The notes under the pieces are model-generated. The model saw only the letters and a list, made by a program, of their open reading frames with translations, did not search any database and had not been told where the DNA came from. This document shows, in pieces, positions 4,084 through 30,765 of a DNA stretch of 56,955 bases; position 1 is the stretch's first letter; the number at the start of each line of letters is the position of its first letter. Both the position numbers and the translations under genes were made by a program. Source of the DNA: Girardia tigrina (taxonomy: Eukaryota). Location: NCBI GenBank assembly GCA_001938485.1, contig MQRK01183053.1, forward strand, positions 1-56,955. Direction: 5' to 3'.

Positions 4084-4449
4084 CTCCATATAATCGATAT
4101 ACTATATGGTGATTATCACATAAGTGTTTCAGATAAATGTGTACGAAGACATTTAATACTACTTTCAGAACAATACCGTAAGAGAACATCAGAGAAACAA
4201 GTATTAAGTCAAAATCAAGTTATAGGAAACAATACAATAAGTGAAGAACATGTTGCATTGATGGAATATTATATGAACAATAATCCTGTTGTCACATCAG
4301 AACAACTAGACGAAATGACCATTCATTTAAATGATCAATTACAAAGTGATTATCAAGTTCATGTTTCAGCGGAATGCGTACGGAAACATTTAATAAGACT
4401 TTCTGGAGAACGTCGAAAAAGTCTTAAATTAACGAAAGTAAATAAATAA
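4084..4449 (+). CDS. Tandem-HTH-repeat protein, copy 1 (type A; 5' end in N gap)
   Basis: Open frame LHIIDILYGDYHISVSDKCVRRHL...LKLTKVNK*, near-identical to the other four copies. Confidence 0.7.
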   Translation, partial: LHIIDILYGDYHISVSDKCVRRHLILLSEQYRKRTSEKQVLSQNQVIGNNTISEEHVALMEYYMNNNPVVTSEQLDEMTIHLNDQLQSDYQVHVSAECVRKHLIRLSGERRKSLKLTKVNK

Positions 4450-5979
4450 TGTGCTGTGAATAAAATAGAAAAATATTTTGCAGATTAATAAACATTTTTA
4501 TAATTAAAAAAAGATTAATAAAAAAATATTTTCATTTAATATTTTTCTAAACTTTTTATCATGTCTTCAAATATTAAATATTTATTAAACTGCAAATTTT
4601 TATTTATGTATAAAAATATAAATAAATAATGACAATATTTTGTAATTATAATTACTAACGGTATTAATAAATTTGATAAGAGTATTTTATAAGTTATTGA
4701 AACAGTTGTTTATCGTCATTTTAATATAAGTTACATCAAAATTGTCGTTAATTAAATCTGAAGATAATAATAGGAAATCTACTGAAATATATTACAATTA
4801 AAATAATATTTAATTTTATCAATATCATTAATAATTATAATTACAAAAAATTATCATTATTTATTTATATTCTTATATATCAAATTGGAAAAGACACTTG
4901 TTTGGACAGTAATTGACGGCTCACGAGAAACTCTTTCTCAATTCTCGGTTATATTTTATAATACTATGAAGTAATTTTGAAAATAAAATTTCATGATAAA
5001 ATTATATATTATTGTTATTATTATTATGATTATTAAACATTACAAAATATTTATTATATATTTTTTGGAATTTAAATTATCTATTGTAATTTTTATTATA
5101 ATATCCTCTCTCCATGTCGAAAGACGATAAAAATCAACATTGTTTGTGTTATATTTAATGACAAATACTGAAATTGTTATTGTTATTTTTAATTCATATT
5201 TAAATAAATGATTTAAGAGGTTCTTGGAACATCCATGGAATAATTTTTAAGAGTTACTCCAGACATCCAAACTTTATTGTGCAACACAAAAAAATTTTAA
5301 ATCTAATATTTAAACAAACTTATTTTTTTGCTTTATAAATCTTAAACCGATATAAATAAAAAATACTTATAATAATAATATTTGATTTTATAATTTAATT
5401 TTATAAATCAATTTTGAATGATGATAACATTTTAAAATATTTAATCGTTTCGTTTAATTTTATTAATTTTTAAAAATCATTAGACATAAAAATTGTACAT
5501 TTTAATTTTTATATTATATTTAAAGCTCTCAAAAAATTTTAATTAATAACAATTTAATTAGGATCTTCTTAATTTGAGTAATTTCTTTTTTTCAAACTTT
5601 ACATATTTAATTATATATCATTTTAAATTTGTATATATTTAATTTAACCTCATTTCAAAAATTTTCCTAACATTTTTAATTTCTTACAAATTATATGTTA
5701 ATTAAATGTAAAATTAAAAGAAAAATAAAATTTAACAATTAAATATAAAAAGAATTAAATAAAATAAAAATTTAATATAAAAAATTAATTATTTGATTTT
5801 TCTTCAACAAAAAAGACAATGTATTAAGGATTCGAGTTAATTAGCTGATTCGTGTGTGTATGTGTGTGTCAATCGTTTTGTTGAGTAGCTAGCGAATGAA
5901 ATGGATCATTCTGATTGTTTAACCAATCATTTATAGCATAATTTTGATTATAACTTTCTGTTAATATTTTTATCCGTTT

Positions 5980-6404
5980 GTTATTTTGATAAAGTAGAGT
6001 CAAATTAAATGTTTGAATTTTACGTCACAAATTTTGGGCCGTCTCCGTATTGTTTATATCAGAGGACAGTTGACTTAGTAATGGATGACTAAAGGTTGAT
6101 TGTGAGATTTGTCCGGGTATATGGGCTTAGTGAAATTTTGTGTAAAGGAAAACTGTATAAATTCATCCAAATTTGTGCACTTGATCAGAATTTTTTTTCA
6201 TTGAATAAATTTTATTGAAAATATTGTTTTGAACCTAGGTAAATTTTAGATTTTATTTCTTTTTTTTTAAGTTGATGGATGTTGGGAAACATCCTCAAGG
6301 CTGCCGATCTGTCGATAGATAACGGTAGGGGCTTATAGTTCCTGCCGATACTGTTGACGATCATTTATGGAATATGAACAAATTTCGAGGTAATTTGATG
6401 ACTG
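5980..6404. repeat. Inner inverted repeat, left arm (partner 7373-7797)
   Basis: ~425 bp near-perfect reverse complement, e.g. gtctccgtat at 6041 versus atacggagac at 7727. Confidence 0.92.
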
Positions 6405-6781
6405 ACTAAATGTATAAAAACATTTCAAATACATTCCAGAATCGTGCATATTGATATATTGTTGTCTGTTGATTAAAATTTTTCTTTAAAATCAGAACAA
6501 AATATTTAAATTGATTCCAAATAGAATTTCATCAACACTATAGATTAACGTCAGGTGCTTATAGTGCCTGCCGAGACTATTGACTATCTGGAAGTTTGAG
6601 GAAGTCCTTACCAAGTTTCATTTCTAGAAGCGATTTTGTTTCTCTCAGCCTCCATCAATTTTTTTGTGTTGTTTTTTTTAAATTGTTTTTCTTTCATTTG
6701 TAATCCACTCATCGTCATTCTTTAGCATGGATACAAAAATTAATTAAATAATTTAACAAATAAGTCAATTAAAATAAAAAA

Positions 6782-7301
6782 TAAATCAAATAAATCTGAA
6801 ACACAATTGGGTATGAAAGCAAATTTAGTTTACAAATATAAATGTCACAAGTGTGAATCCTTGTACATTGGAGAGACAAATCGTCACCTCCGCACTAGAA
6901 TTGCAGAACATACCCAATCAAGTAGAAAAAGCTCAATTTTGGACCACATAGTGAAATGTCATGGATCTCAAAGGAGGGTATTTGATAATGATTTTCGGGT
7001 TTTGATTAGTAACTTTGATCACAATTATGAAAGGACAATTACTGAAGCACTCTTGATAAAGTTTTGTAAACCAAGTCTAAATGTGCAAAGTGATTCGTCC
7101 AATTATATTAGAGTATTTTGACGTAACACACTGTGACGTAATGGTCATCTTTCTATATAAACAATAACTTTCTAATTAAATACAGAACTGAAGATGCCAC
7201 AAAAGTGGCGAAAGATGTTTTCCAATAAAAATTTAAATTAAAATTATGTTATTTTTGTTTAATGACTAAATTACCATTTGATTTAAAGAAATTAAATTTA
7301 T
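6782..7301 (+). mobile_element. 5'-truncated Penelope-like retroelement (GIY-YIG C-terminus plus pLTR) with 13-bp TSD
   Basis: ORF 6807-7121 has LVYKYKCHKC..YIGET.RHL.TR..EH..H...EAL.I...P.LN, the Penelope GIY-YIG with CCHH. TTAAAATAAAAAA occurs at 6769-6781 and 7302-7314, and the paralogous site near 29283 is empty. Confidence 0.85.
7185..7222 (+). ncRNA. Minimal type I hammerhead ribozyme motif (stem III probably degenerate)
   Basis: gaa-CTGAAGA-t-GCCAC-aaaa-GTGGC-GAAA-gatg-TT-ttc. It lies downstream of TATATAA (7154) and upstream of AATAAA. Confidence 0.7.
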
Positions 7302-7372
7302 TTAAAATAAAAAAGTGAAGAATATGTCTCTCTCAAAAAAAAGCACCTGACGTTAATCTATTTATAGATCGG

Positions 7373-7797
7373 CAGTCATCACATTACCTCGAAATCTGTT
7401 CATATTCTATAAATGATCGTCAACAGTATCGGCAGGAACTATAAGCCCCTACCGTTATATATCGACAGATCGGCAGCCTTGAGGATGTTTCCCAACATCC
7501 ATCAACTTCAAAAAAAAGAAATAAAATCTAAAATTTACCTAGGTTCAAAACAATATTTTCAATAAAATTTATTCAATGAAAAAAAATTCTGATCAAGTGC
7601 ACAAATTTGGATGAATTTATACAGTTTTCCTTTACACAAAATTTCACTAAGCCCATATACCCGGACAAATCTCACAATCAACCTTTAGTCATCCATTACT
7701 AAGTCAACTGTCCTCTGATATAAACAATACGGAGACGGCCCAAAATTTGTGACGTAAAATTCAAACATTTAATTTGACTGAACTTTATCAAAATAAC
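7373..7797. repeat. Inner inverted repeat, right arm
   Basis: Reverse complement of 5980-6404. Confidence 0.92.
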
Positions 7798-8413
7798 ATT
7801 AATATGGGAACGTATACAAAAAGGTTATTGACGTTAAAATTTGTTCATGTTGATGTTATTGTAGCTTTCAAAATGTTGACAGATATATACCCAAATGAAA
7901 TAGTTGAATTAATAAATTATTGGGAGGGTAATTATATTGGAAGAATTAGACGCAACCGTAGAGTAGTAACAATGTTTCCATTTAACGTTTGGGATATGTT
8001 TCGTAGAGTTAATGATGATTTGCCACATACAAATAATTCAGTTTAAAGTTGGCATAGAGCCTATCAACAAACTGTGGAGTGCCATCTCCCTCAATTTTTA
8101 AAATAGTGGAATATTTTAAAAAAGAACAACATCAAATGGAAATAGAATATAAACGTTTTCAAACCGGATTTCGACGATCAGAAGCTTCGAAAAACAAATA
8201 TGTAACCTTAAACAAACGGATAAAAATATTAACAGAAAGTTATAATCAAAATTATGCTATAAATTATCTAAAACGATTGTCATATATTCTGGAAATATAA
8301 TAAAATGTGTTATTTTTTTACTATTTTTCATTTTATTACTCTTATTTAAAACATTTTGTTGTTTTTGTTCTTGTTACAATTTTACAAGTCGTTGCGCGCT
8401 TTTGTCGGGGCGC
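7774..8413 (+). pseudogene. MULE (Mutator-like) transposase C-terminal fragment with probable element end
   Basis: YWEGNYIG...FPFNVW...LPHTNNSV*SWH...PSIFK resembles the MULE TNNxxExWH region. A GC-rich end gcgcgcttttgtcggggcgc lies at ~8394-8413, and an internally deleted copy is at ~28560-28884(-). Confidence 0.7.
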
Positions 8414-9477
8414 TATTATTTATATCATCATTATATTGTTTAAATCCCAAATAATATAAGTTTTACAAAAGAATTTTTATAAAAACTAAAAAGTCCTATA
8501 ATATTTGGGATTTAAACAATACAATATTAGTAGAAATAATGATACTTTCTGTTAAGAAATTGATTTTGAGTATGCTTCGAATAATTGATTATTTTTCTCA
8601 ACGAATTCGATTTTCCCCTTTGATGTCAAATCAAAACAACTCATCCATCTTTCAACCTTTATTAAAGAAACATCATTTTTTTACAGTTATTAACCTTTTT
8701 TTAATTTTGTACAATTATTTAGAACACCAATATGACTTTTAACATTTTATATAAAAGTACATGTTTGACTGTCCTTAGGAATATCTTGTGACGAATATCC
8801 ATGTCAAAGTTTTCGTACGATTGCATCATTTTAATTGATTATTGACTTGTAATTTTATTAACAGAGTAAATGGAGATTAAATTAACCAATAAAGTTTTTC
8901 TTCCAAATTGTGATGTATTTGTTTAAATCGGTTGTTTGCCGATTGAGATTTTAATTTCAAGTATAACTTGTGCGCTGTTCATTGTGTTGTTGTTACTCAA
9001 ATTTTATTAATTAAAAATTAAAATAAAATATAATTTATTTTAAAAAATAGTAATACAATTTATTTATTTAAAAATTTACTAGAAAAGAAATTTACGCAAA
9101 GTAAATAAATATCTACAGAGAAGAAAAAAGGGGGCAACCAAGATTTTAAATTTCTGAACAATTTTCGTTAAGTCTGAAGATAATAATAAGAAATCTACTG
9201 AAATATATTACAATTAAAATAATATTTAATTTCAATAATATCATTAATAATTAAAGTTATAAAAATTATCATTGGAATTTTATATTTTTATACATAAATA
9301 AAAAATTGTAGTTTAATAAATATTTAATATTTGAAGACATGATAAAGAGTTTAGAAAATAATTCTATTCGAAAAATATTTTCTACAATAATATTTATTTT
9401 AAATAAAAATGATTTTAAAAAATATGTAAAATCGTTTAATAATTTGCAAAATATTTTACTATTTTATTCACAGCACA

Positions 9478-9957
9478 TTATTTATTTACTTTCGTTAATT
9501 TAAGACGTTTTCGACGTTCTGCAGAAAGTCTTATTAAATGTTTCCGTACGCATTCCGCTGAGACATGAACTTGATAATCACTTTGTAATTGATCATTTAA
9601 ATGAATGGTCATTTCGTCTAATTGTTCTGATGTGACAACAGGATTATTGTTCATATAATATTCCATCAATGCAACATGTTCTTCACTTATTATATTGTTT
9701 CCTCTAACTTGATTTTGACTTAATACTTGTTTCTCTGATGTTCTCTTACGGTATTGTTCTGAAAGTAGTATTAAATGTCTTCGTACACATTTATCTGAAA
9801 CACTTATGTGATAATCACCATATAGTATATCGATTATATGGAGGACCATTTCGTCTAATTGTTTTGATGTTACAACAGGATTATTTGTACAATAATATTC
9901 CATTAAGGAGAGATGTTCTTCTTTTAGATTACAATTTTGACAACTCTGAATATTCAT
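9478..9957 (-). CDS. Tandem-HTH-repeat protein, copy 2 (type A, 159 aa)
   Basis: Intact ATG-to-stop ORF with two ~55-aa repeats EEH..LMEYY..NNPVVTS.QLDEM......VS..CVR.HL. Confidence 0.75.
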   Translation of the reverse strand: MNIQSCQNCNLKEEHLSLMEYYCTNNPVVTSKQLDEMVLHIIDILYGDYHISVSDKCVRRHLILLSEQYRKRTSEKQVLSQNQVRGNNIISEEHVALMEYYMNNNPVVTSEQLDEMTIHLNDQLQSDYQVHVSAECVRKHLIRLSAERRKRLKLTKVNK

Positions 9958-10461
9958 AATATTACTTTTAGTTTTTAATATAGAAAACGTTTGAAATAAC
10001 TAATAGACTTGTTATAAAGTTTAATTTATTACAATATTAAATGGGAATGATAATTTTTAATAAAATAATAAATAATATTCTCATTGGATAAAAATGAAGT
10101 GAAATGTTTCTATGTTGAACTATGGAATAATTAGCTGATAAATGAAATTGAATTCTTAATGGGGTGTGATGAGAAGGATGAAAATTCTTCAATATTATGT
10201 GTTGATTAATTGAGTGTTTACCTTTACTTACGGACTCTTCATTCTTTTACTATCAGTATTTTTGATGTTACTTCACCACGGTCATAATGTCGCCGGTCAA
10301 GCATTTCAAGGATAAAATAATCGCCGGTGATTGATGAACACTGATTTGCTGTTTCTTTATAATATATGCTAACGATAACTTTTATATTATAACGTAATTA
10401 ATATCACCGATTTTCCTCTTTTAAATTTTTCTGAGGTTATGGATGGTCATTTTTATATAAC

Positions 10462-12435
10462 GTGCTTCTCAGTCCAAGCACCCTGGCATCTTTGTCGAAG
10501 CCAATCAGTTCTATGGGTTTAGACTCCAACCCAAACCGTCGAAAAATTCCTACAACATCCTCTCCATTACAAGAACTTTCCGCAATGAACACGTCATCAA
10601 TATACCCAGAAGCAGTTATCGTCTGCTCTTACTTGATAATCGTTTCAACTATTCTTGACATGACCTTTGGCGCAATGGATAGACCAAACCCTAACTTGGT
10701 CATCACATACACTTCGCCATTCCACATATCGGCCTGATATTTCCACAAATCTGGAAATATCAGCCACCCTTATTTGTAGGTAAATCTTTTTTAAATCCAT
10801 TAGAGCGCAGTTGGCTTCCAATTTTCTCCACTCCCGTAATCGTGACTGGCAACTGGCATATCTGCTTCCCGGATAGCTATGAATTTGTACGTTCAGTAAC
10901 CTGTAGTCTCATACCGGCCGTATTCGTGTCGTTTTGCCTTTGACTTGCCGCACTCCCATCAACGGTATCATGTTACGAATCTTCCCGTCTCGCTTTTCAT
11001 CCCACTTTACCAGAACACCTTCGCTTATGCACTCATTCACTTCATCTTGTAATGGCTCTTTATTTTCATTGGGAATGTCATAATTGACACATGAGGTTCT
11101 CCCAACCGTATGATCATCGGCAAATCTCCATCGTGTGCTCCAATACCTTCCGTCACATTGAGATTCAAAATCATCCTCTTTTATCTGCAAATGTCTTCCA
11201 CTTTTCACTCCAGATGCTGCATTAACAACTTCCAGTTTTGCTCCATTACTGCCAAATTTTATACAAACATCATCACCGTCTACCCGTATTGTCAGTCCAC
11301 GTTTGAGAATAACATCGTTTCCCACTAAGATGTCGACACATACAGGCAGTCTTTCAACTACAATTGCTCCAACAGGCCCCAGGTTCATACCGCCAAATAA
11401 AATCTCATGTTGATGCACTTTACCCAGGATATTTACCTGCCTACCGCTGACCGCTACCATGTTCATGTTTCTAACTCCTTCGATTCTTGACTTTATGCAA
11501 CATTTTCTAATAAGAGTGGCACTACTCCCCGTGTCGATCATCTACTTCATCATTTCCCCGTCGATTAGCGCTTGACGAATAAATAAATTCGGAATAACAG
11601 CGAACATGAATAAAATAATGGCGATTGCGAATTTTTGAGACGATTCACGGCCGCCTTGTTGACATAGTTGTCCTGGGGCGTTGTGGTTTTTTATAGGCGT
11701 AACTATTGCCGGTAGTTACACCACCACCCCCTCTTACTTTGACATTTGGTACTACACCATTTACTGGGGAGAGGTTGGACAAGTGACCTTCTCCCCTCTG
11801 TCGTTTCCCGACATGTTCTAGTTTGCTTTTATATGGTCGACTTCTCCGCATTTAAAGCATTTAACCCTACACGTCTTCTGCGTGTGTCCAAGTCAATTAC
11901 AACCAATACATCGAAATTTACTGTTGGTCGCCGCAATCCCTTTTTGATGATGTTGATGAGGTGATATCTTTTTGGCCAAGTTCACCACACTCTTGAACGT
12001 GAATTCGACGTCCAATCTTGGCTGCACCTTTTTCTTTAATTGATCCGGTAAACTGTGAATAAATGTCATTGCACAAAACGCATCGATCAGAACCTGGTCC
12101 CCATCAACGGTCCGTATCAGCTAATTGATCTCGGCCGCCGACACGTTCAATCTGTCACCCGGGAGAATCTTTTTTTGACCAAGCAACAGCCATGCGTCAA
12201 ATCTCCCCAAACAAAACACTGGGCGCAACTCAACTTTGATTTCCTTGGCATATCTCTGTTGATCCAGCGATAAGCCCTTCCACGTGTCGTATGCCGGCCA
12301 GTCCAACAGCATGACCAAGCATGAGACTTGTTTATCCATTACCCTATCTACCTCGATGGCAAACTCGAATCTGTAGATCCAACGTTCGACGTCCTCCTTA
12401 CCATAAAATTTCTTCAAGTTACTGATTGCTTTCAT
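10462..12435 (-). pseudogene. LTR-retroelement gag-protease-RT remnant (second lineage)
   Basis: Gag-like start MKAISNLKKFYGKEDVERWIYRFE, broken zinc knuckle CFKCGEVDH (~11830-11860), MIDTGS protease and YIDD RT, truncated at the 3' end. Confidence 0.82.
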
Positions 12436-13328
12436 TGCCGCGATAGCTTGTAAAATAAGATGATTTTTTCGATTTACAAAAAACTATGTTATTCAAACAA
12501 ATTAGATGATCCAATTAATTACAAAACGATTATGTGAAAATTAGATCAAAAAAACTTTTTAAGATCCTAAAATGGGAACAACGGAAAATTCGAAGTTTCA
12601 TTAAAATATTAATTAAAAAAGATCTACTTATAAATCATAATTAGTTTATATTAATGCTTTATTGTGTTTTTTAATCATTTCTTTTAAGTAAAACTTTGTT
12701 GTCAAAGTAGAGTTTTGTCTGCATAAAGAATGGATTTTAAAAATTTAATGTTTTGATTTACTAGTTTATTATAAAATTAAATTTTAAATTACATTTTAAA
12801 CAAAAAAAGACTGCTATTTTTATGTTATCTGTATATTTTCGTGCATGTATTATATGAGATAAGATCTAGAATTACCCATTACATCAATTGACATGAGAAA
12901 TAAAAGTTAAACGCCTATATCTCTTTGGAATTACATCTTACAATTCCGAGTTTATGCATTTGGTACTCCAAATAATTCTCGATTCGAATCCGGATTCCAA
13001 ATCCAGTATTGAAGAACCGACTCCGAAAAGAAAAAGAAAAATGTATTCTTGTTTCGTTTGCCGCATCAAGGAAGTACTGTAAGTTAAATTCGTTATTCTG
13101 TGAAACTCTTACTATTGTGTGATTCGATCTTTTCGTCTTTGCTGTTTATTTTCATTGTTGAACAATTATAAATTTTGTTTATATTGTTTTATCTTTATTC
13201 TTTTATAAACATTGTGAAAAAAAGTTCACTGAACTTTAATTTTTGATTTAGATTTTTTTACAGTTATAATTAGTTGAGAATACGTGTACAATTTTTATAT
13301 AAAATATTCTTAATATTAATTATCGATT

Positions 13329-14246
13329 ATGATTAGGCAAATTACATTAATAGTCGTATTTTTATCTTTAATAATGACATTATTATTATTCAAGCATATC
13401 AAGATCGATTCAGATTGCAGGGAATTCCTTCTTTTGAATCAGAACAAATTTACATCTCCTAGTAGCGATAACAGTACAAATTTCAGCGTAAATGTTTTAA
13501 ACCTCATCGCAAAAAATCACACTTTTCAAAAAGCATCGTTGAAATACAACAATCGTAACATAAATATTTATGTTTACGATACACATGACTTGATTTCCAG
13601 AGAGATTATCGAAATTGGAACGTGGGAAAAAAAATGGGTCGATCAAGTGATGAAATCAATGATGAAATACAACGAATCTCAATTGCTCGATATCGGATGC
13701 AATTTGGGAGTGTATTCGCTCGTGGCGGCTTCTCTCGGCCACCGGGTTGTGGCTGTCGATGCCAACAGGAACAACACAGAACGATTGGTTCAATCCGCCG
13801 TCGATAATCATTTCGAAGACCGAATACAAATTGTGTCGAATGCGGTTTCCAATGTGAAAAAAGAAGTGTCGATGAGATTGGTCAGGGGGAATATCGGAGG
13901 TCAAGAACTGGAAGATGTTGGCAAACATTCGTATAAGATCACGAGTATATTTATGGATGATTTAGTGCCATTGATGGAAAAAGGGAAAGAGGTCATTATC
14001 AAAATTGACATCGAAAGAAGTGAAATAAAAGCAATTCAAAAATCGTCACGATTATTTTCAGAAAGAAAAGTTGTAGCTGTATTTATGGAATGGGAATGGA
14101 TAAAAGTTATGAAGGAATGTTATGCCTTAATTTGTTTCTTTATGACCCAAAATTATCGACCTTATTCGGATTTCGTTTCGACCGTCGAACTTGAGGTATC
14201 GGAATTTTGGTCATGGCCTTACGAAATAGTGTGGAAAAAAAATTGA
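13329..14246 (+). CDS. FkbM-family SAM-dependent methyltransferase with N-terminal membrane anchor
   Basis: Intact 305-aa ORF with hydrophobic N-terminus and GTWE, LLDIGCNLGVYSL, VVAVDA, IVSNAVS, GNIGG and IIKIDIERSE motifs. Confidence 0.88.
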   Translation: MIRQITLIVVFLSLIMTLLLFKHIKIDSDCREFLLLNQNKFTSPSSDNSTNFSVNVLNLIAKNHTFQKASLKYNNRNINIYVYDTHDLISREIIEIGTWEKKWVDQVMKSMMKYNESQLLDIGCNLGVYSLVAASLGHRVVAVDANRNNTERLVQSAVDNHFEDRIQIVSNAVSNVKKEVSMRLVRGNIGGQELEDVGKHSYKITSIFMDDLVPLMEKGKEVIIKIDIERSEIKAIQKSSRLFSERKVVAVFMEWEWIKVMKECYALICFFMTQNYRPYSDFVSTVELEVSEFWSWPYEIVWKKN

Positions 14247-14689: not shown

Positions 14690-16053
14690 GAGAGGGCCGC
14701 GAAAAATAATCGGACACGAACAAAAATATATTTAATTAAACAGCATTACAGAAAATGATGATGAGAATTAATGCAAATCAGTATTTTGTTGGAAATCCCA
14801 ATGTTTTAATAATTTCAAAGCATCTTTTTTGAAATTTTTTTTTTCACCAAATTTCGACAAACGTCTACCGGAATTTTTTGCCATTCTTCTTTTATTATTT
14901 TAAATTTTTCTTTAGCATTTTTTGCATTACGCCCCTTGATTTGTCGGTCCAGATGGTCCCANNNNNNNNNNNNNNNNNNNNNNNNNNNNNNNNNNNNNNN
15001 NNNNNNNNNNNNNNNNNNNNNNNNNNNNNNNNNNNNNNNNNNNNNNNNNNNNNNNNNNNNNNNNNNNNNNNNNNNTCATTATCATGTTGGAACAAAAAGC
15101 TTTGTGCCATATTTCTCTCAGCAAACGTCACCATAGCATCTCTTAATATGTCTCTGTAAACAATTGCATTCATCTTTTCTTCTATTTGAACAATAGGACC
15201 TACACCATTTCTGCTAAAGCACCCCCATACCATGACATTTCCTCCACCATGCTTAATTGTAGGAATTTGATATTTTGGTTCAAATCTTTTGTTGGCGGGC
15301 CTTCTAACATATGANNNNNNNNNNNNNNNNNNNNNNNNNNNNNNNNNNNNNNNNNNNNNNNNNNNNNNNNNNNNNNTCCATTCAATATGATTCTTTGCAA
15401 ACTCAATTCTGGCCTTCCTGTTCTTAGCTGAAACAAAAGGTTTTTTGGCTGGTCGTCTTCCATATAAAGAAACATCTTTTAAACGTCTTTTGACACTTGA
15501 AACATGAACATTCATTCCATGAAAAGATGAAATTTCAGACTTTATATCAACAGCTGTTAGTCTAGGATTCGATTGTGATATCCTTTTAATCATTTTATCT
15601 TCTTTATTAGAAGTTTTTCTCAATTGCCACATCTTGGCAATTGAGAAGCAGTGCCACGCACCTTTGACAATTTTATAATGTCACCAACTGTTGACTTTGG
15701 TACTTTGAGAAGCTCAGATGTCTTTCTTATAGATAAAAGGCGATTGTAAGCCACTAGAACATTATTTCTTTCTTCAATGGTTAATTGACGTTTTCTTGGA
15801 CCAGTTTGAAATCTCATTATCACACTACTGTTGTGAATTTGTGAGCAAAAAAATGTCCGATTATTTATGAGCGAAATGAATTACAAAAACAGATTTTATT
15901 AAAGAATTTATTGATTTATCGATAATTTAATTTTTTATGAAAGATATCAAACTGTTAAGCTACAGATTTTGGCAAAATTTCATTAATATATTTAATACCA
16001 TTCAAGAGATATAGCCAATTTTCACTTCGTCCGGTTATTTTTGAGAGCTACTG
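14690..16053 (-). mobile_element. Tc1/mariner DNA transposon; transposase 15817->14778 frameshifted
   Basis: Paired HTH regions, RPAKKPFVS..NRKARIEFA, KHGGGNVMVWGCFS, FQHDN and terminal GFPTKY*. The right end is ...GCTACTG|TA, and aaaaataa(t/c)cggac is shared by both ends in inverted orientation. Confidence 0.9.
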
Positions 16054-16340
16054 TATTAGACAGCACAATTCTCGTTAATTAAAATCGGTAGATAATATGA
16101 AATCTACCGAAATATATTACAATTAAAATAATATGTAATTTAAGATTTAAAAATTGTTATCTTTTTTTATTTTTGTTTATAAATAAACAAATTATAGCTA
16201 ATTCAATACTTGAAGACATGATTACGAGTTTAGAGAATCAATTTTAAAAGTCAAAAAAATTACCAGCAATAATATTTATTTTAAGAAATTTATAAAATTG
16301 TTTATTAATTAGGAAAATATTTTTCTACTTTATTCAGAGT

Positions 16341-16841
16341 TCATTGTTTGATTGCTTTGGTTACTTTTATACTTTTTCGACGTTCTGCAGAAAGTCTTAT
16401 TAAATGTTTCCGTACGCATTCCGCTGAAACATGAATTTGATAATCACTTTGTAATTGATCATTTAAATGAATGGTCATTTCGTCTAATTGTTCTGATGTG
16501 ACAACAGGATTATTGTTCATGTAATATTCCATCAATGCAACATGTTCTTCACTTATTGTATGGTTTCCTATAACTTGATTTTCACTTAATACTTGTCGTT
16601 TCTCTGATGTTCTCTTACGGTATTGTTCTGAAAGTAGTATTACATGTCTTCGTACACATTTATCTGAAACACTTATGTGATAATCACCGTATAGTATATC
16701 GATTATATGGATGATCATTTCATCTAATTGTTTTGATGTTACAACAGGATTATTTGTACAATAATATTCCATTAAGGAGAGATGTTCTTCTTTTAGATTA
16801 CAATTTTGACAATTTTGATTTTTCATAATATTACAAGACAT
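16341..16841 (-). CDS. Tandem-HTH-repeat protein, copy 3 (type B, 166 aa)
   Basis: Intact ORF. The segment 16054-17055 is an inverted duplicate of ~30054-31052. Confidence 0.75.
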   Translation of the reverse strand: MSCNIMKNQNCQNCNLKEEHLSLMEYYCTNNPVVTSKQLDEMIIHIIDILYGDYHISVSDKCVRRHVILLSEQYRKRTSEKRQVLSENQVIGNHTISEEHVALMEYYMNNNPVVTSEQLDEMTIHLNDQLQSDYQIHVSAECVRKHLIRLSAERRKSIKVTKAIKQ

Positions 16842-17050
16842 GTTTTAAATAACTAATAAATTTGTTATAAAGTTTACATATTAACATGTTAAATGAGATC
16901 GACTGATTTTAATAAAATAATAAATAATATTTTAATTGGATAAAAATGGAGTAAAAAGTTGTTATTTTGTTATTTGGAACTACTATATGATTTATTACTT
17001 TTTATATGACTCATTATTTTTTGCAATTTGATAAGTGGCTTGTGTAGATA

Positions 17051-22267: not shown

Positions 22268-25200
22268 TGTCACGACCCTCTCAAGTGCAAACACTTTTAA
22301 AAGCTCATGAGCCCCCAGTGATTGTTAAGGGTCAACCACAACTCATTGTAATTTTATTTTTACTTTAAAGTTGATTATACACAGGGTCGGACGTCTCCTA
22401 TTTTGCCTGACATCTGTCTAGCAGTGCCAAGCTCAAGGGGCCTTCGGGTTCAGTTAGAAGTGGGATAGACTGTGGGCCCCCACCTGGGTCAGCATCGATA
22501 GGGGAATGATTTCAATTTGTACAGTTAAGTAACCTTCCGATACTTACATCGCTTATGTCTGCCCGTAGAGGTGTGCTGGCATCATATGTTTGAAAAGTTA
22601 GTTTATCGTAAGAATTAGAGGTCATTATAAAGTCGTCGTCATTTCGGTCATCTTATCTCTGTTTTAATTCAGCACCTTGCGTTTTCTAGAAATCCCTTCC
22701 TGGTACTTTTGTCTATAATAATTTTTCCGCATAATACTAAGTCCTAAGATTATTTAGCAGAGGTAACTGATTAACGGACATCTAATTCGTAGTTCTGTCA
22801 AAAGAAAATTTTACAGAGTCCGAAAGGAAATCCCTATCCAAATTCGTCGATTTTCTCTGGAGCCTAATGTCCAATATCAAGCATATCTTATAAATTTTAT
22901 TAATTTAATCAGCGATATTTTGTATTTAATGAACAATCAAATGATATTCGCAATTTAAATAGCAAATAAATATCATTCCGACGCCTCCAGTCATCATGAA
23001 AACAATGAGAAAATGTGAAAATAGTTACTTCGGGGTGTTCTACTTATTATATTTATTTATGAAACTTGATCGAGAAATTTTCAGAATTTTCAAAAATTCG
23101 AAATTTGATAACATTTATCAGAAAAAAATTTAAGAGATCTTGTAAAGTTTTTTATCATAAGTTTCGTTAGTGAGCTCGACATATTCACCCTAATTATTTA
23201 ACAAATTATAAATTTATCATAATGAATTGAGTGAGTGAATAAATGGTGATAATGAATATCTTAATGAAAAAAATTTTTTTATAATCTACAAAAGCCATAT
23301 GGAAATTATAAAAATCTATTTTACGAAAAAATCATGAAAATAATTAATAATAATTATATACAAAACTTTAGTTCAAGATGTGTTTGTTTTAATATTTCAA
23401 CCCTATCCTCGAGGTCGCGCCACCAAATCAAACCCCGTCGGATTCTATCTTCATGTTTCTGGTGGAACGGAGTTTTCTCTTGACTCTGTCGCCATTTGAT
23501 TAATCTAGGTGACTCGCGATTCCACGCTGGCTGGAGCCCACTCAATACGAGCACCTCAGTTAAATAACTTAATGGTAACGGTCGCTCATTGACGATGATT
23601 AAGGTACTGCGACCTTCATTGATTGATTCAGGTAATCGATAATTACTCCGGGGCATCTGCGATGCAGGACGACGTCGGCGACGGGAACGACTACGAAGGG
23701 CGGCGGCTGTTGAGACCTACGGCTTGGAACCCGTGGCCGTCCGGGCTAAATCGACAAAGGAGAATAACCCATCGGCACTTAAACTCGGTTAGATAATATT
23801 TTATTCGAACAACAATTGCCTATAACTGAATTAACTAATAGAAAAAGAGAAAAAGGATTAAATATAAATTATAATTCAATTTAAAATAAATTCAATTCAA
23901 ACATTTATTTAAATTTTTAAACCAGAATAAAACTCGTCAATATAAAATAAATACAACACAATAATTTAATTTTACTGTAATAGTATCCAGGGAGTGTTAA
24001 AGCTCGGGTCAATTGTTTGTTCACGCGTCGTTCTTCGCCGGTTGCCTCGATAGAAAGTCGGAGTACGCAGTGACGGTTCTGCACTCGAATTGGTCGTCTC
24101 AAGTCGCGGCTGTGGCTCTCCTTTTCGATTTCGCTGCCGTACAACGCCAATGAATCCGCTTTGTGGCTGATCGTTAGCGTTTTCCTCTGGTTATTAACTT
24201 GTTTCTTCCTCCTGATTTCGTTGGATTGCGCTACTGTGGTTCGCTGCTCAAATTGGTTTTCTTGAAGGTGCGTTAATACGTCGTCTCAAGCGTCTATCAA
24301 AATTGTGCGACTTAGTTAAAAATTGACTTCTCTTTTATATTCTAGGTATATTGTCCTGTGTTAAGGTCCTGAAATTAAAAAAATATTTTAAAAAAAAACA
24401 AATTTTAAAAATAAATAAATAAGTAAACTTACTCTCCTAAAAAACAAAAATATATAAATTATAAAAAAATAATAAATTATAATTAAAATAAAATGTGTCG
24501 ATTANNNNNNNNNNNNNNNNNNNNNNNNNNNNNNNNNNNNNNNNNNNNNNNNNNNNNNNNNNNNNNNNNNNNNNNNNNNNNNNNNNNNNNNNNNNNNNNN
24601 NNNNNNNNNNNNNNNNNNNNNNNNNNNNNNNNNNNNNNNNNNNNNNNNNNNNNNNNNNNNNNNNNNNNNNNNNNNNNNNNNNNNNNNNNNNNNNNNNNNN
24701 NNNNNNNNNNNNNNNNNNNNNNNNNNNNNNNNNNNNNNNNNNNNNNNNNNNNNNNNNNNNNNNNNNNNNNNNNNNNNNNNNNNNNNNNNNNNNNNNNNNN
24801 NNNNNNNNNNNNNNNNNNNNNNNNNNNNNNNNNNNNNNNNNNNNNNNNNNNNNNNNNNNNNNNNNNNNNNNNNNNNNNNNNNNNNNNNNNNNNNNNNNNN
24901 NNNNNNNNNNNNNNNNNNNNNNNNNNNNNNNNNNNNNNNNNNNNNNNNNNNNNNNNNNNNNNNNNNNNNNNNNNNNNNNNNNNNNNNNNNNNNNNNNNNN
25001 NNNNNNNNNNNNNNNNNNNNNNNNNNNNNNNNNNNNNNNNNNNNNNNNNNNNNNNNNNNNNNNNNNNNNNNNNNNNNNNNNNNNNNNNNNNNNNNNNNNN
25101 NNNNNNNNNNNNNNNNNNNNNNNNNNNNNNNNNNNNNNNNNNNNNNNNNNNNNNNNNNNNNNNNNNNNNNNNNNNNNNNNNNNNNNNNNNNNNNNNNNNN

Positions 25201-26630
25201 NNNNNNNNNNNNNNNNNNNNNNNNNNNNNNNNNNNNNNNNNNNNNNNNNNNNNNNNNNNNNNNNNNNNNNNNNNNNNNNNNNNNNNNNNNNNNNNNNNNN
25301 NNNNNNNNNNNNNNNNNNNNNNNNNNNNNNNNNNNNNNNNNNNNNNNNNNNNNNNNNNNNNNNNNNNNNNNNNNNGATTCAATCGAATAAAGTTTTTAAA
25401 AGAATTCCTTTGACTTATTTCTATTGTTATTATTTGAAAAAGACTCTCTGACGAGATTCTTTCAAGAGAAATAGAAACCTCAAGAGAGGATTAATCAAAA
25501 TACTATATTCATTACAAAGTTGGAAGAACCATTTGAAAAGGAGTCAGATAATTATATTTGAAAGCTTATTTAAAGTGGTTATCAAAAGAATATTTTCGAA
25601 TACCCAACACCTGTTGCCTTCTTTTGTCCAACCAGGCCTTGTCAACCGACTCTCTGAAATTTCTGCGATGCTGGTTGGTCGGGCTGGTAAGTGTGTCTAC
25701 AAATTTTTCAAAATTTTAAAAATTTTTATTTTATTATAGGATCTAGTGCTCGTGTGTCTTTACACACGTTCAGATTTCTCTAACATGCCTGCTGCTGATT
25801 CAGGGATGATTCGTCAGCTGACGATTATTTTCGGATTCTGGGTTGACTCATGGTAAGATTAATTAATTTTCCATTTTTCTTAATTAATTGTTTGATCTTT
25901 CAGGGCCTATAACTTTCCTCAGAGTTGTCCTACGACTTCGCGGGTTTCGTCCACGGATTGCCCGTGCGAAGATCTTTTGTGGGAGGGTCGGATGACCCCG
26001 TAGCTTCATTGGATAATCCAGTAGGTGACTTTGTTAATTTTTGTCTGCTTTTTTTAATTAATTCTTTTCTTTATGGGTGAATAACTTCTTTCAAGGATCC
26101 GCTGTTATCTCACACGCTCTGCCCATGGATTCGTCTCGCGAGTGGCTACGCGGAGGGGGTCGGATGACCTCTCAGCTCCAATGGATAATTCGGTAGGCGA
26201 CTTTATTAATTTTTGGGTTTATTTTAATTAATCTCTTATTCTTTTAAGGTTTACTATCTCTACTCGCGGGTTCTTCAGACGTCAACGGGTCGCTTTCGCG
26301 GAACCCCCCTTGCAGTACTTAACCGGGGCGGTTGTTCGTCCTCTTTTATCGGGTGAGTTTTTATTCGACTTTGTCTGGTTTTTTATTTATGATGTATTTT
26401 TTAGTTCTCCTGCAGTATTTTCGATGTCCCACCAGTCCATGAGAAATTGGTGTCAGCTTCGAGGTGCGATCGGGCCGATAACTGGGACTTTGAACCTCTT
26501 GAATGTAATTGTTATTATTTCGAATATATGTATTGCATGGTTATTATTCTTCTGTTTCTTTCGTTTGTTGAATGTTGTGTTTGGTGCTCTGCGTGCCTGT
26601 ATATGTCAAAATGGTTTTTCGACCACAACA
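22268..26630 (+). mobile_element. 4.4-kb TGT...ACA insertion with 4-bp TSD CATA (giant solo LTR or non-autonomous integrase-mobilised element)
   Basis: ttagCATA|TGTCAC...ccacaACA|CATAtattataaag. The uninterrupted sequence ttagcatatattataaag is present at ~3454-3471 and ~10355-10372(-). Confidence 0.8.
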
Positions 26631-29600
26631 CATATATTATAAAGAAACAGTAAATAAGTGTTCATCAATCACCGGCGATGATTTTGTCCTTGAAATGCTT
26701 GACCGGCGACATTGTGACGGCGGTGAAGTAACATCAAAAATACTGATAGTAAAAGAAGGAAGAGTCCGTAAGTAAAGGTAAACACTTAATTAATCAACAC
26801 ATAATATTAAAGAATTTTCATCCTTCACATCACACCCCATTACGAATTCAATTTCATTTATCAGCAAATTATTCCATAGTTCAAAATAGAAACATTTCAC
26901 TTCATTTTTATCCAATTAGAATATTATTTATTATTTTAATAAAAATTATCATTCCCATTTAATATTGTAATAAGTTAAACTTTATAACAAGTCTATTAGT
27001 TATTTCAAACGTTTTCTATATTAAAAACTAAAAGTAATATTATGAATATTCAAAGTTGTCAAAATTGTAATCTAAAAGAAGAACATCTCTCCTTAATGGA
27101 ATATTATTGTACAAATAATCCTGTTGTAACATCAAAACAATTAGATGAAATGATCATCCATATAATCGATATACTATACGGTGATTATCACATAAGTGTT
27201 TCAGATAAATGTGTACGAAGACATTTAATACTACTTTCAGAAGAATACCGTAAGAGAACATCAGAGAAACGACAAGTATTAAGTCAAAATCAAGTTATAG
27301 GAAACAATACAATGAGTGAAGAACATGTTGCATTGATGGAATATTATATGAACAATAATCCTGTTGTCACATCAGAACAACTAGACGAAATGACCATTCA
27401 TTTAAATGATCAATTACAAAGTGATTATCAAGTTCATGTTTCAGCGGAATGCGTACGGAAACATTTAATAAGACTTTCTGGAGAACGTCGAAAAAGTCTT
27501 AAATTAACGAAAGTAAATAAATAATGTGCTGTGAATAAAATAGTAAAATATTTTGCAGATTATTAAACGATTTTACATATTTTTTAAAATCATTTTTACT
27601 TAAAATAAATATTATTGTAGAAAAATTTTTCGATTAGAATTATTTTCTAAACTCTTTATCATGTCTTCAAATATTAAATATTTATTAAACTACAATTTTT
27701 TATTTATGTATAAAAATATAAAATTACAATGATAATTTTTATAATTATAATTATTATTGATAATGATGAAATTAAATATTATTTTAATTGTAATATATTT
27801 CAGTAGATTTCTTATTATTATTATCTTCAGACTTAATTAAAGTTCATAAATTTAAAATCTTGGTTGCCCCCCTTTTTTCTTCTTCTCTGTAGATATTTAT
27901 TTACTTTGCGTAAATTTTTAAATAAATAAATTGTATTACTATTTTTTAAAATAAATTATATTTTATTTTAATTTTTAATTAATAAAATTTGAGTAGCAAC
28001 AGCACAATAAACAGCGCACAAGTTATACTTGAAATTAAAATCTGAATCGGCAAACAACCGATTTAAACAAATACATCACAATTTGGAAGAAAAATTTTAT
28101 TGGTTTATTTAATCTCCATTTACTCTGTTAATAAAATTACAAGTCAATAATCAATTAAAATGATGCAATCGTTCGAAAGCTTTGACATAGATATTCCCGA
28201 GGACAGTCAAACATGTAATTTTATAAAAAATGGTAAAAATCAGATTGGTGTTCTAAATAATTGTAATAAATTAAAAAAGGTTAATAACTGTAAAAATGAT
28301 GTTTCTTTAATAAAGGTTAAAAGATGGATGAGTTGTTTTGATTTGATATCAAAGGGGAAAATCGAATTCGTTGAGAAAAATAATCAATTATTCGAAGCAT
28401 ATTCAAAATCAATTTCTTAACAGAAAGTATCATTATTTCTACTAATATTGTATTGTTTAAATCACAAATATTATAGGACTTTTTGAGTTTTTATAAAAAT
28501 TCTTTTGTAAAACTTATATTATTTGGGATTTAAACAATATAATGATAATATAAATAAAGCTCCCCGACAATAGCGCGCAACGACTTGTAAAATTGTAACA
28601 ATAACAAAAGCAACAAAATGTTTTAAATAAGAGTAATAAAATGAAAAATAGTAGAAAAATAACACATTTTATTATATTTCCAGATTATATGACAATCGGT
28701 TTAGATAATTTATATCATAATTTTGATTATAACCTTCTGTTAATATTTTTATCCGTTCGTTTAGGGTTACATCATCAACATGAACAAATTTTAACTCCAA
28801 TAACCTTTTTGTATACGTTCCCACATTAATGTTATTTTGATAAAGTTCAGTCAAATTAAATGTTTGAATTTTTTTTAACGTCACAAATTTTGGGCCGTCT
28901 CCGTATTGTTTATATCTGAGGACTGTTGACTTAGTAATCGATGGCTAAAGGTTGATTGTTAGATTTGTCCGGTTATATGGGCTTAGTGAAATTTTGTGTA
29001 AAGGAAAACTGTATAAATTCATCCAAATTTGTGCACTTGATCAGACTTTTTTTCATTGAATAAAAGAATAATTGAATAAATTTTATTGAAAATATTGTTT
29101 TGAACATAGGTAATTTTTAGATTTTATTTCTTTTTTTTTAAGTTGATGGATGTTGGGAAACTCAATTATTTTTTTTGTGATGTTGTTTTTTTAAATTGTT
29201 TTTCTTTCAATCGTAATCCACTCATCATCATTCTTTAGCATGGATAGAAAAATTAATTAAAAAAATTTAACAAATAAGTCAATTAAAATAAAAAAAAGTG
29301 ATGAATATGTCTCTCTCAAAGGTCGCTGTGATTGGTTAACCAATCAGAATGATCCATTTCATTCGCTAGCTACTCAACAAAACGACTGACACACACACAC
29401 ACGAATCAGCTAATTAACTCGAATCCTTAATACATTGTCTTTTTTGTTGAAGAAAAATCAAATAATTAATTTTTTAAATTAAATTTTTATTTTATTTAAT
29501 TCCTTTTTATATTTAATTGTTAAATTTTGTTTTTCTTTTACTTTTACATTTAATTAACATATAATTTGTAAGAAATTAAAAATGTTAGGAAAATTTTTGA

Positions 29601-29635
29601 AATAAGGTTAAATTAAATATATACAAATTAAAAAT
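26631..29635. repeat. Rearranged segmental duplicate of the 5.6-10.4 kb block
   Basis: 26631-29160 matches the reverse complement of ~7490-10365 with deletions. 29165-29320 matches 6655-6781 joined to 7315-7337, and 29330-29630 is the reverse complement of ~5620-5928. Confidence 0.88.
27042..27524 (+). CDS. Tandem-HTH-repeat protein, copy 4 (type A, 160 aa)
   Basis: Intact ORF with the same two-repeat structure. Confidence 0.75.
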   Translation: MNIQSCQNCNLKEEHLSLMEYYCTNNPVVTSKQLDEMIIHIIDILYGDYHISVSDKCVRRHLILLSEEYRKRTSEKRQVLSQNQVIGNNTMSEEHVALMEYYMNNNPVVTSEQLDEMTIHLNDQLQSDYQVHVSAECVRKHLIRLSGERRKSLKLTKVNK

Positions 29636-30264
29636 CCATGAACATCAGAAGGGTCACAGACAGAAAAACTAAATCCTATAGAGTGCGACTCCGGCTGAAG
29701 TTCCTCTAATGCGAGCAGCAGACGAATTATAACGAATGTAGTCCTTCTGTCGGTGGCTTTATAGAAAACATAATAAACGAAACAATCAACCCCCTCTTTA
29801 AAATCAACATAGAAAACATCCGAAAAGGCTGTCATCAGCTGCGCCCTCATGTATCGGATCGTCCTGCAGGAACAACTGGGAGTGGGGACATTTTAGTCAC
29901 TGAGATATCTAAAAAAAAGTTTATTCTAAAAAAAAGTCAACAGAAGATTAATGTCTATAGTACCAAAAGGGAAGTAACTATGAACCTCCAACGATTTGAA
30001 TGCTTCCAAATGTCGAATCTTATTGATATTTTGCCGCCTAACGATAAGTGGCTTATCTTATCTACACAAGCCACTTATCAAATTGCAAAAAATAATGAGT
30101 CATATAAAAATTAATATATCATGTAGTAGTTCCAAATAACAAAATAACTTTTTATTCCATTTTTATCCAATTAAAATATTTTTTATTATTTTATTAAATT
30201 CAGTCGATCTCATTTAACATGTTAATATGTAAACTTTATAACAAATTTATAAGTTACTTAAAAC

Positions 30265-30765
30265 ATGTCTTGTAATATTATGAAAAATCAAAATTTTCAA
30301 AATTGTAATCTAAAAGAAGAACATCTCTCCTTAATGGAATATTATTGTACAAATAATCCTGTTATAACATCAAAACAATTAGATGAAATGATCATCCATA
30401 TAATCGATATACTATACGGTGATTATCACATAAGTATTTCAGATAAATGTGTACGAAGACATGTAATACTACTTTCAGAACAATACCGTAAGAGAACATC
30501 AGAGAAACGACAAGTATTAAGTCAAAATCAAGTTGTAGGAAACAATACAATAAGTGAAGAACATGTTGCATTGATGGAATATTATATGAACAATAATCCT
30601 TTTGTCCCATCAGAACAATTAGACGAAATGACCATTCATTTAAATGATCAATTACAAAGTAATTATCAAGTTCATGTTTCAGAGGAATGTGTACGGAAAC
30701 ATTTAATAAGACTTTCTGCAGAACGTCGAAAAAGTATAAAAGTAACCAAAGCAATCAAACAATGA
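30265..30765 (+). CDS. Tandem-HTH-repeat protein, copy 5 (type B, 166 aa)
   Basis: Intact ORF, paralogue of 16341-16841. Confidence 0.75.
   Translation: MSCNIMKNQNFQNCNLKEEHLSLMEYYCTNNPVITSKQLDEMIIHIIDILYGDYHISISDKCVRRHVILLSEQYRKRTSEKRQVLSQNQVVGNNTISEEHVALMEYYMNNNPFVPSEQLDEMTIHLNDQLQSNYQVHVSEECVRKHLIRLSAERRKSIKVTKAIKQ

What the first reader, a model, noticed from the sequence alone, without database searches (positions are those of the whole stretch)
4084..30765. Five-copy family of a transposase-like double-HTH mini-protein kept open inside a transposon graveyard
Seen: copies at 4084(+, partial), 9478(-), 16341(-), 27042(+) and 30265(+) fall into two subtypes. None has a stop or frameshift, and the only internal indel is an in-frame codon (KRQ/KQ), whereas the larger TE ORFs around them are broken. 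Each protein is two ~55-aa repeats (EEH..LMEYY..NNPVVTS.QLDEM...L...Y.I/V.VS..CVR.HL), each followed by a basic NLS-like patch. The pattern NP..T...(V)S/H..V.R.L also appears in the second HTH of the Tc1 transposase in this window (SQSNPRLTAVDIKSEISSFHGMNVHVSSVKRRL). Knowledge: Tc1/IS630 transposases bind TIRs through such HTH domains, and DNA-binding-only transposase derivatives can act as repressors or be domesticated. Inference: this may be a lineage-specific, catalytic-domain-less DNA-binding gene family, possibly a transposon repressor or new transcription factor, amplified by inverted duplication.
Basis: partly seen in the sequence, partly recalled or inferred. Interest (0 to 1): 0.78.

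Follow-up and report, generated by a model that had tools for sequence, protein, structure and literature searches.

The report
Expanded family of small double-helix-bundle genes
The five small open reading frames are real members of a family of several dozen intronless genes, found so far only in this genome, that encode two homeodomain-like three-helix modules and are kept intact by selection; descent from a transposase and DNA binding are plausible but not shown.

Summary
Five copies lie where stated, in two subtypes, with no stop or frameshift. The "partial" copy at 4084 is cut only by an assembly gap.

Genome-wide there are at least 90 matches and about 40 full-length copies, roughly nine in ten of them intact, in four clades down to about 63% amino-acid identity.

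Selection is clear. dN/dS is about 0.35-0.4 for diverged pairs. The two repeats are constrained (pN/pS 0.42 and 0.33) and the linker is not (0.94). Neutral drift would leave 0.3-1.5% of copies stop-free at 12-18% divergence.

The unit shared by all clades is about 190 bp of upstream sequence with an invariant CCAAT-box block, the ORF, and AATAAA about 10 nt after the stop. It has no terminal repeats, so it looks like a gene and not a mobile element.

Each repeat is predicted as a homeodomain-like three-helix bundle (Z 7-7.8, suggestive only).

Seventeen of 18 members hit Pfam DUF7570, up to 39 bits, so the module is already catalogued as unknown.

The link to the Tc1 transposase second HTH is weak (hhalign P 0.0012, probability 19%). 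The two modules are duplicates of each other, not a PAI+RED pair.

Expression is untested.

Other windows of this genome carry first-reader notes on tandem-HTH genes. My profile search found only this family.

The parts
4084..4449 (+). Copy 1 (160-aa subtype). Only codons for about residues 39-160 plus the stop are visible; the 5' part lies in assembly gap 3526-4081.
   Evidence: 97-98% aa identity to copy 4, no stop; truncated by N, not by mutation
9478..9957 (-). Copy 2, intact 159-aa gene (160-aa subtype with a one-codon deletion). The conserved unit is about 9402-10108.
   Evidence: DUF7570 29.2 bits
16341..16841 (-). Copy 3, intact 166-aa gene (subtype B). The conserved unit is about 16268-16969.
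   Evidence: sister of copy 5 in the tree
27042..27524 (+). Copy 4, intact 160-aa gene. Repeat 1 is about aa 8-85, the linker about aa 73-92, repeat 2 about aa 86-160.
   Evidence: AlphaFold2 helices 13-25, 31-49, 55-81, 93-105, 111-128, 135-159
30265..30765 (+). Copy 5, intact 166-aa gene (subtype B). The conserved unit is about 30146-30905.
   Evidence: DUF7570 27.6 bits
26857..27041 (+). Conserved upstream block of copy 4 (putative promoter). It holds ATCCAAT at 26910-26916 (CCAAT box, about -130 from the ATG) and the TATA-like TTTATAAC at 26981-26988.
   Evidence: homology to all clades starts at 26846-26906; the CCAAT block is conserved in all four clades (invariant in 11 of 13 aligned copies, CCAAT core in all 13)
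27534..27539 (+). AATAAA polyadenylation signal 10 nt after the stop of copy 4. Homology to the more distant clades ends at about 27499-27629, for most copies near 27554.
   Evidence: an AATAAA or a variant follows the stop at +9 to +20 in the copies inspected
15384..15596 (-). Comparator, not part of the family: the HTH_Tnp_Tc3_2 domain of a Tc1 transposase whose frame is interrupted by assembly gaps 14962-15075 and 15315-15376.
   Evidence: PF01498 70.9 bits; the genome has 11,785 first-look candidates for this domain

Best explanation
**What it is.** These are members of a multigene family, found so far only in this genome, of small (about 155-172 aa) intronless genes.

**Protein.** Each protein is a tandem duplicate of one 55-60-residue module. 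One member has three modules. The module is predicted as a homeodomain-like three-helix bundle. Helices 1 and 2 are acidic. Helix 3 is long and basic, carries the conserved VS..CVR.HL motif, and runs into a K/R patch. A poorly constrained linker joins the modules.

**Gene.** Each gene carries its own compact control region, with a conserved CCAAT-box block and A/T-rich boxes within about 190 bp, and an AATAAA about 10 nt after the stop.

**Evolution.** The family grew by repeated local and dispersed duplication into at least four clades, and selection keeps the ORFs intact.

**Most likely mechanism (inferred, not shown).** The two modules bind nucleic acid side by side through their third helices, like paired or double-homeodomain proteins. 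With no effector domain, the protein would act as a competitor, repressor or architectural factor.

**Origin.** The module falls in Pfam DUF7570. It may descend from the second HTH of a Tc1-type transposase, but that is only weakly indicated.
For: **Shown**
- Five window copies are open.
- There are 90 matches in the genome, about 40 of them full-length, and only about 4 of those carry stops.
- There are four well-supported clades.
- dN/dS is 0.35-0.39 for pairs with dS above 0.3.
- pN/pS is 0.42 for repeat 1, 0.94 for the linker and 0.33 for repeat 2. Repeat 1 against repeat 2 gives dN/dS 0.29.
- Codon-position identity runs pos2 > pos1 > pos3 in diverged pairs. Upstream indels are 1, 2, 9 or 14 nt, while the CDS indels seen in the alignments are whole codons.
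- The neutral stop-free probability is 0.015 at 12% divergence and 0.003 at 18%.
- The shared unit is the promoter block, the ORF and the poly(A) signal, with a CCAAT block conserved across all clades.
- No TIR, TSD or poly(A) tail was found.
- AlphaFold2 predicts three helices per repeat, with pLDDT 78 for the single repeat.
- 47 of the top 50 VIA-align matches are homeodomains, with Z 6.5-7.8, rmsd 2-3 A and 53-66 residues aligned.
- 17 of 18 members hit DUF7570, up to 39.4 bits against a cut-off of 27.

**Inferred**
- DNA binding and the regulatory role.
Against: - No expression evidence. No listed run is recorded as RNA, and only short contigs at 87-96% identity, of unknown library kind, lie on the ORF.
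- The fold Z scores are in the range the tool calls common for small helical models.
- Overall pI is 6.4-8.3, and helices 1 and 2 are strongly acidic. That is atypical for HTH DNA binders and compatible with protein-protein binding.
- Copies 93-96% identical inside the unit lose homology abruptly at variable points just outside it. That could also mean mobility or gene conversion.
- The assembly is fragmented and partly redundant, with identical hits on differently named contigs. The true copy number may be about half.
Confidence: 0.7

Rival explanations
1. The ORF belongs to a mobile element. The roughly 700-bp unit is a small non-autonomous element or a cargo gene of a larger transposon, and selection acts at the level of the element, not the host.
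For: - Dozens of dispersed copies, many on short contigs in TE-rich DNA.
- Copies 93-96% identical inside the unit have unrelated flanks starting 150-216 bp upstream and 5-50 bp downstream.
- TE proteins also show dN/dS below 1.
Against: - No terminal inverted or direct repeats, no poly(A) tail and no consistent termini. Breakpoints vary from copy to copy (-216, -155, -130, about -90; +5 to +190).
- No transposase, RT or integrase is consistently next to the copies.
- The minimal shared unit matches promoter + ORF + poly(A) signal, with an invariant CCAAT block.
- Copy number is tens, against thousands for the Tc1 elements in the same genome.
Confidence: 0.15
2. It is a domesticated Tc1/mariner DNA-binding module that binds Tc1 terminal repeats and represses transposition.
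For:
- That score is above 150 of 150 column shuffles (maximum 15.4) and above the reversed controls (10-11).
- Homeodomains score 10.9 and the Tc1 first HTH scores 7.6.
- The ESM feature search lists Tc1-type HTH clusters at 0.75-0.76, which is a lead only.
- Tc1 is extremely abundant here.
Against: - hhalign probability is only 19%, and column shuffling is a lenient null.
- HMMER finds no PF01498 hit even at E 10.
- No Tc1/mariner HTH appears in the top 50 structural matches.
- No intermediate sequences were found in the genome.
- The two modules are duplicates of one another, not PAI+RED.
- pI is near neutral.
- There is no evidence about TIR binding.
Confidence: 0.12
3. The copies are neutral, recently amplified repeats whose ORFs are open by chance or through assembly redundancy.
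For: - Window copies differ by few substitutions, and pairwise dN/dS among them is 0.4-1.3 on 7-29 changes.
- Some contigs in this assembly are duplicates.
Against: - Clades at 18-25% nucleotide divergence are still open. The neutral expectation is 0.3% or less, against about 90% observed.
- dN/dS is about 0.37 for deep pairs, with a domain-against-linker contrast.
- Frame-preserving indels occur only in the CDS.
Confidence: 0.03

Closest known systems
Pfam DUF7570 (PF24454), family of unknown function
   Same: 17 of 18 family members match at E < 0.01. The clade represented by L034 reaches 39.4 bits against a cut-off of 27. Two of the four full-length window copies pass the cut-off (29.2 and 27.6 bits) and two fall just under it (26.6 and 26.0).
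   Different: Only model positions 2-57 of 94 are matched, and mainly by repeat 2. Here the module is tandemly duplicated and the family is expanded to dozens of copies. The taxonomic range and seed of DUF7570 could not be retrieved with the tools. No DUF7570-like protein surfaced in the searches of 1.84 or 5.8 billion proteins.
Tc1/mariner transposase second HTH (HTH_Tnp_Tc3_2, PF01498) and genes derived from Tc1/mariner DNA-binding modules (e.g. Drosophila CG4570 and cag, the Pax paired domain; PMC13548663)
   Same: It has a three-helix HTH with an N-P-x-x-T cap on helix 2 and V-S-x-x-x-V-R-x-x-L in helix 3, and no catalytic domain. The profile similarity is weak but above the controls.
   Different: There is no HMMER-level match. 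The two modules are paralogues of each other and not a PAI+RED pair. Helix 2 is about 8 residues longer and helices 1-2 are acidic. The family is multi-copy, whereas domesticated genes are usually single-copy.
Homeodomains and double-homeodomain proteins (DUX4, tandem engrailed constructs)
   Same: The predicted fold is closest to these: Z 7-7.8, rmsd 2-3 A, and whole-domain coverage. Two modules joined by a flexible linker are also seen in DUX4.
   Different: There is no sequence relationship (hhalign P 0.19, no PF00046 hit). The WFxNRR recognition-helix signature and the basic N-terminal arm are both absent.

Membership tests
Pfam DUF7570 (PF24454) | Whole-protein score at or above the gathering cut-off (27 bits) | tested here: met
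   Window copies score 29.2 and 27.6 (pass) and 26.6 and 26.0 (just under). The L034 clade scores 39.4 and L033 scores 38.7. 17 of 18 members match at E < 0.01.
Pfam DUF7570 (PF24454) | Match over the full 94-position model | tested here: not met
   All matches cover only positions 2-57 of 94.
Tc1/mariner transposase HTH (PF01498 HTH_Tnp_Tc3_2) | HMM match at or above 31.5 bits | tested here: not met
   PF01498 is not listed even at E <= 10. The window's own Tc1 scores 70.9 bits.
Tc1/mariner transposase HTH (PF01498 HTH_Tnp_Tc3_2) | Remote homology by profile-profile comparison | tested here: inconclusive
   hhalign probability 19%, P 0.0012, score 21.5. Column shuffles reach at most 15.4 (n = 150), and reversed controls score 10-11.
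Tc1/mariner element or transposase | DDE/D catalytic domain and flanking terminal inverted repeats | tested here: not met
   The ORF ends after 160-172 aa. Only A/T-rich chance inverted repeats flank the unit.
Paired-type bipartite DNA-binding domain (PAI + RED) | Two different HTH subdomains homologous to transposase HTH1 and HTH2 | tested here: not met
   The two modules are 51-59% identical duplicates of each other. There is no similarity to the Tc1 first HTH (score 7.6).
Homeodomain (PF00046) | Sequence-profile match | tested here: not met
   No Pfam hit. hhalign against eight homeodomains of this genome gives P 0.19.
Homeodomain-like fold (three-helix bundle with a long third helix) | Structural superposition on solved homeodomains over the whole domain | tested here: inconclusive
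   Z 6.5-7.8, rmsd 1.7-3.8 A and 53-66 residues aligned; 47 of the top 50 matches are homeodomains. The tool notes that Z below 8 is common for small helical models. The model is predicted (pLDDT 78).
Expressed protein-coding host gene | Transcript or peptide evidence | not testable with these tools
   No listed run is on record as RNA. Only short diverged contigs of unknown kind lie on the ORF.

The most novel reading that the evidence does not exclude
A flatworm-specific family born from a single Tc1-type HTH module was duplicated in tandem and then expanded as a host defence. Its members would bind the terminal repeats of the thousands of Tc1 elements in this genome and block the transposase, in an arms race that explains the multiple diverging clades. 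The invariant CCAAT box would give NF-Y-driven expression in stem or germ cells.
Probability: 0.08. Interest if true: 0.75.

Novelty: new member of a known kind. Interest (0 to 1): 0.42.

Why it matters
If expressed, this would be one of the larger lineage-restricted families of effector-less, double-module HTH-like proteins in an animal genome. Each gene has a very compact promoter with a conserved CCAAT box. That offers a handle on gene birth and expansion in a TE-saturated genome, and a first functional context for Pfam DUF7570. If the Tc1 link were proved, it would be a rare case of a transposase DNA-binding module becoming a multi-copy host family instead of a single domesticated gene. 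As it stands, it is a well-supported but uncharacterised gene family.

Tried and rejected
**Searches that found no relatives**
- The HMMER profile search of 1.84 billion representatives returned only the family's own cluster and one spurious repetitive ORF, P0005.
- Word-based searches with the whole protein and with the single-repeat profile returned only P0001-P0004, unnamed metagenome ORFs 71-97% identical to the window copy.
- Pattern scans of prokaryote genomes, viral contigs and metagenomes found no relatives.
- The PDB sequence search gave nothing below E 0.16.
- The ESM Atlas gave scores of 0.83 or less, which are leads only. The second query, restricted to named clusters, gave nothing.

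**Structure search**
- Foldseek on the two-domain model gave E >= 0.34. Double-HTH proteins came top but not significantly.

**Within the genome**
- The single-repeat profile was run to look for the multi-HTH genes noted by other first readers. It found only this family and its fragments.

**Other features in the window**
- Rfam and tRNA scans found nothing.
- The TIR search found only low-complexity A/T matches.

**Literature**
- Nothing was found on DUF7570 or PF24454.

**Expression**
- One run holds 8% of the words. Laying it gave only short contigs at 87-96% identity, of unknown library kind, so nothing can be said about expression.

The result is only a negative control.
Full report
**Observation.** The ORF listing and the protein alignment confirm five copies: 4084-4449 (+), 9478-9957 (-), 16341-16841 (-), 27042-27524 (+) and 30265-30765 (+). 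Three are of a 159/160-aa type. Two are of a 166-aa type that starts five codons earlier. Identity to the 27042 copy is 88-98%. There are no stops or frameshifts, and the only internal indel is one codon. The internal repeat is real: the two halves are 77% identical in DNA and 51-59% in protein.

**Assembly gaps.** A scan for N runs shows that none of the three gaps flagged by the scan's program lies in a mini-ORF.
- The gaps at 14962-15075 and 15315-15376 interrupt the Tc1 transposase frame. That element can therefore be called neither intact nor broken, and the single frame through the N runs means nothing because gap lengths are estimates.
- The gap at 24505-25375 is intergenic with respect to this family.
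- A further gap (3526-4081) abuts copy 1 and is the only reason it looks partial. The mirror arm has about 456 nt between the corresponding points, which fits in the 556-N gap. I did not fill any gap.

**Family size.** A six-frame search of the window's own genome (1.43 Gb, 255,254 contigs) gives 90 matches. About 40 span nearly the whole protein, and only about four of those contain stops.
- Several apparent low identities are caused by N runs inside copies. Intact members go down to about 63% identity.
- One member (L033:1436-2143) has three modules.
- A maximum-likelihood tree of 27 intact coding sequences resolves four well-supported clades. All window copies fall in one clade. The two 166-aa copies are sisters. 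The 160-aa copies sit in a polytomy with copies from five other contigs.
- So this is not a five-copy local family, and inverted duplication explains at most the 166-aa pair.
- The assembly is partly redundant: identical hits occur on differently named contigs. Copy number is therefore an upper estimate.

**Selection.**
- Pairwise Nei-Gojobori estimates give median dN/dS of 0.39 for dS 0.3-0.6 and 0.35 for dS above 0.6. Window pairs have too few changes to be informative (0.4-1.3).
- Pooled pN/pS is 0.42 for repeat 1, 0.33 for repeat 2 and 0.94 for the linker. Repeat 1 against repeat 2 gives dN/dS 0.29.
- In diverged pairs, identity by codon position is pos2 > pos1 > pos3 (for example 0.82, 0.75, 0.68). 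The upstream 190 bp is about as diverged as third positions and carries 1-, 2-, 9- and 14-nt indels, whereas the CDS indels seen in the alignments are whole codons.
- Random substitution of this AT-rich coding sequence leaves it stop-free in 32%, 11%, 1.5%, 0.3% and 0.02% of trials at 3, 6, 12, 18 and 25% divergence. About 90% of full-length copies are open.
- Purifying selection on the protein is therefore well supported.

**Gene anatomy.**
- Against all other loci, homology to the 27042 copy starts at about 26846-26906 and, for the diverged clades, ends at about 27499-27629.
- An alignment of upstream regions from all clades shows a conserved block TTT(T/C)ATCCAATCA (a CCAAT box, at 26910-26916 in the window). 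It is followed by CATTTAA and TTTATAAC blocks.
- AATAAA lies 10 nt after the stop (27534-27539), and an equivalent signal follows the stop in the other copies inspected.
- There are no terminal inverted repeats beyond A/T-rich chance matches. There is no poly(A) tail and there are no consistent termini.
- Copies that are 93-96% identical inside the unit lose homology at variable points (-216 to about -90 upstream, +5 to +190 downstream). I read this as flanks churned by insertions and rearrangements while the promoter-ORF-poly(A) unit is protected. It also leaves room for gene conversion or some form of mobility.

**Fold.**
- AlphaFold2 with family alignments predicts six helices, three per repeat. 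Mean pLDDT is 70 for the whole protein and 78 for the single repeat.
- Foldseek gives no significant hit. It ranks double-HTH proteins first for the whole model (tandem engrailed, Pax6, DUX4, POU) and homeodomains first for the single repeat.
- VIA-align against 48,161 representatives, and again on Foldseek's top 504 chains, puts homeodomains in 47 of the top 50. Z is 6.5-7.8, rmsd about 2-3 A, and 53-66 residues align.
- The tool's own note says Z below 8 is common for small helical models. I therefore treat 'homeodomain-like three-helix bundle' as likely but not proved.
- Overall pI is 6.4-8.3. Helices 1-2 are acidic and helix 3 with its tail is basic. This weakens the inference of DNA binding.

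**Relatives.**
- Pfam gives one consistent hit, DUF7570 (PF24454). The window copies score 26.0-29.2 bits against a cut-off of 27. Seventeen of 18 members match at E < 0.01, and one clade reaches 39.4 bits. The match always covers model positions 2-57 of 94. In this genome DUF7570 hits only this family.
- Outside Pfam nothing was found. The HMMER profile search of 1.84 billion representatives returns only the family's own cluster plus a spurious repetitive ORF.
- Word searches return four unnamed metagenome ORFs 71-97% identical to the window copy.
- Pattern scans of prokaryote, viral and metagenome contigs find nothing, and PDB sequences give nothing.
- No paper mentions DUF7570.

**The Tc1 idea.**
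- I built a profile of the Tc1 HTH_Tnp_Tc3_2 domain from ten copies in this genome.
The score is 21.5, P is 0.0012 and the probability is 19%.
- Controls: 150 column shuffles have mean 9.2 and maximum 15.4; reversed profiles score 10-11; eight homeodomains of this genome score 10.9 with P 0.19; the Tc1 first HTH scores 7.6.
- The resemblance is thus specific to the second transposase HTH and above these lenient nulls, but far from proof.
- HMMER finds no PF01498 hit. No Tc1/mariner HTH is among the top structural matches. No intermediates exist in the genome.
- The architecture also differs. The two modules are duplicates of one module, not the transposase's PAI+RED pair.
- Co-option of DNA-binding modules is a documented Tc1/mariner domestication route in Drosophila (PMC13548663). 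The idea is therefore reasonable, and I give it about 0.12.

**Expression.** No listed run is recorded as RNA. One run of unknown kind holds 8% of the words, and only short contigs at 87-96% identity lie on the ORF.

**Earlier notes.** Other first readers flagged 'tandem transposase-type HTH module' genes on other pieces of this genome. My single-repeat profile did not detect any family other than this one, so whether those are related is open. The word 'flatworm' comes from an earlier follow-up note, and I did not verify it.

**Verdict.** This is a real, selected, expanded gene family, found so far only in this genome, of double homeodomain-like modules. The module is already catalogued as DUF7570. 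Function is unknown. DNA binding and a regulatory role are inferred. Transposase origin is possible but weakly supported.

Noticed in passing
window 2073-3525 and 10302-11754: The outer arms of the large imperfect palindrome are 99.8% identical and carry a retroelement gag/protease fragment. The inner arms, which carry mini-gene copies 1 and 2 (4082-4673 against 9845-9228), are only 90% identical. The two layers therefore have different ages, or the scaffold joins haplotypes wrongly.
   Followed up: partly
window 13329-14246 (+): An intact, intronless 305-aa ORF with an N-terminal hydrophobic anchor and a borderline FkbM-type methyltransferase domain (PF05050, 23.2 bits against a cut-off of 22.7). 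It sits between retroelement fragments and the Tc1 copy.
   Followed up: partly
L033:1436-2143 (G000:C193935): A family member with three modules (236 aa). The extra module is a recent copy of repeat 1, so module number is still changing.
   Followed up: partly
L040 (G000:C223675:68088-68582) and L041/L042: Family copies in which the second module is interrupted by about 250 nt of unrelated sequence (an insertion or an intron), and contigs with several partial modules in tandem.
   Followed up: no
genome-wide (G000): The HTH_Tnp_Tc3_2 domain has 11,785 first-look candidates, so Tc1 elements are extremely abundant. Many searches return identical hits on differently named contigs, which shows redundancy in the assembly.
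   Followed up: no
window 6807-7121 (+): A 104-aa GIY-YIG stub (PF01541, 21.9 bits, just under the cut-off) typical of Penelope-like elements. The Rfam gathering-threshold scan found no hammerhead ribozyme anywhere in the window.
   Followed up: partly
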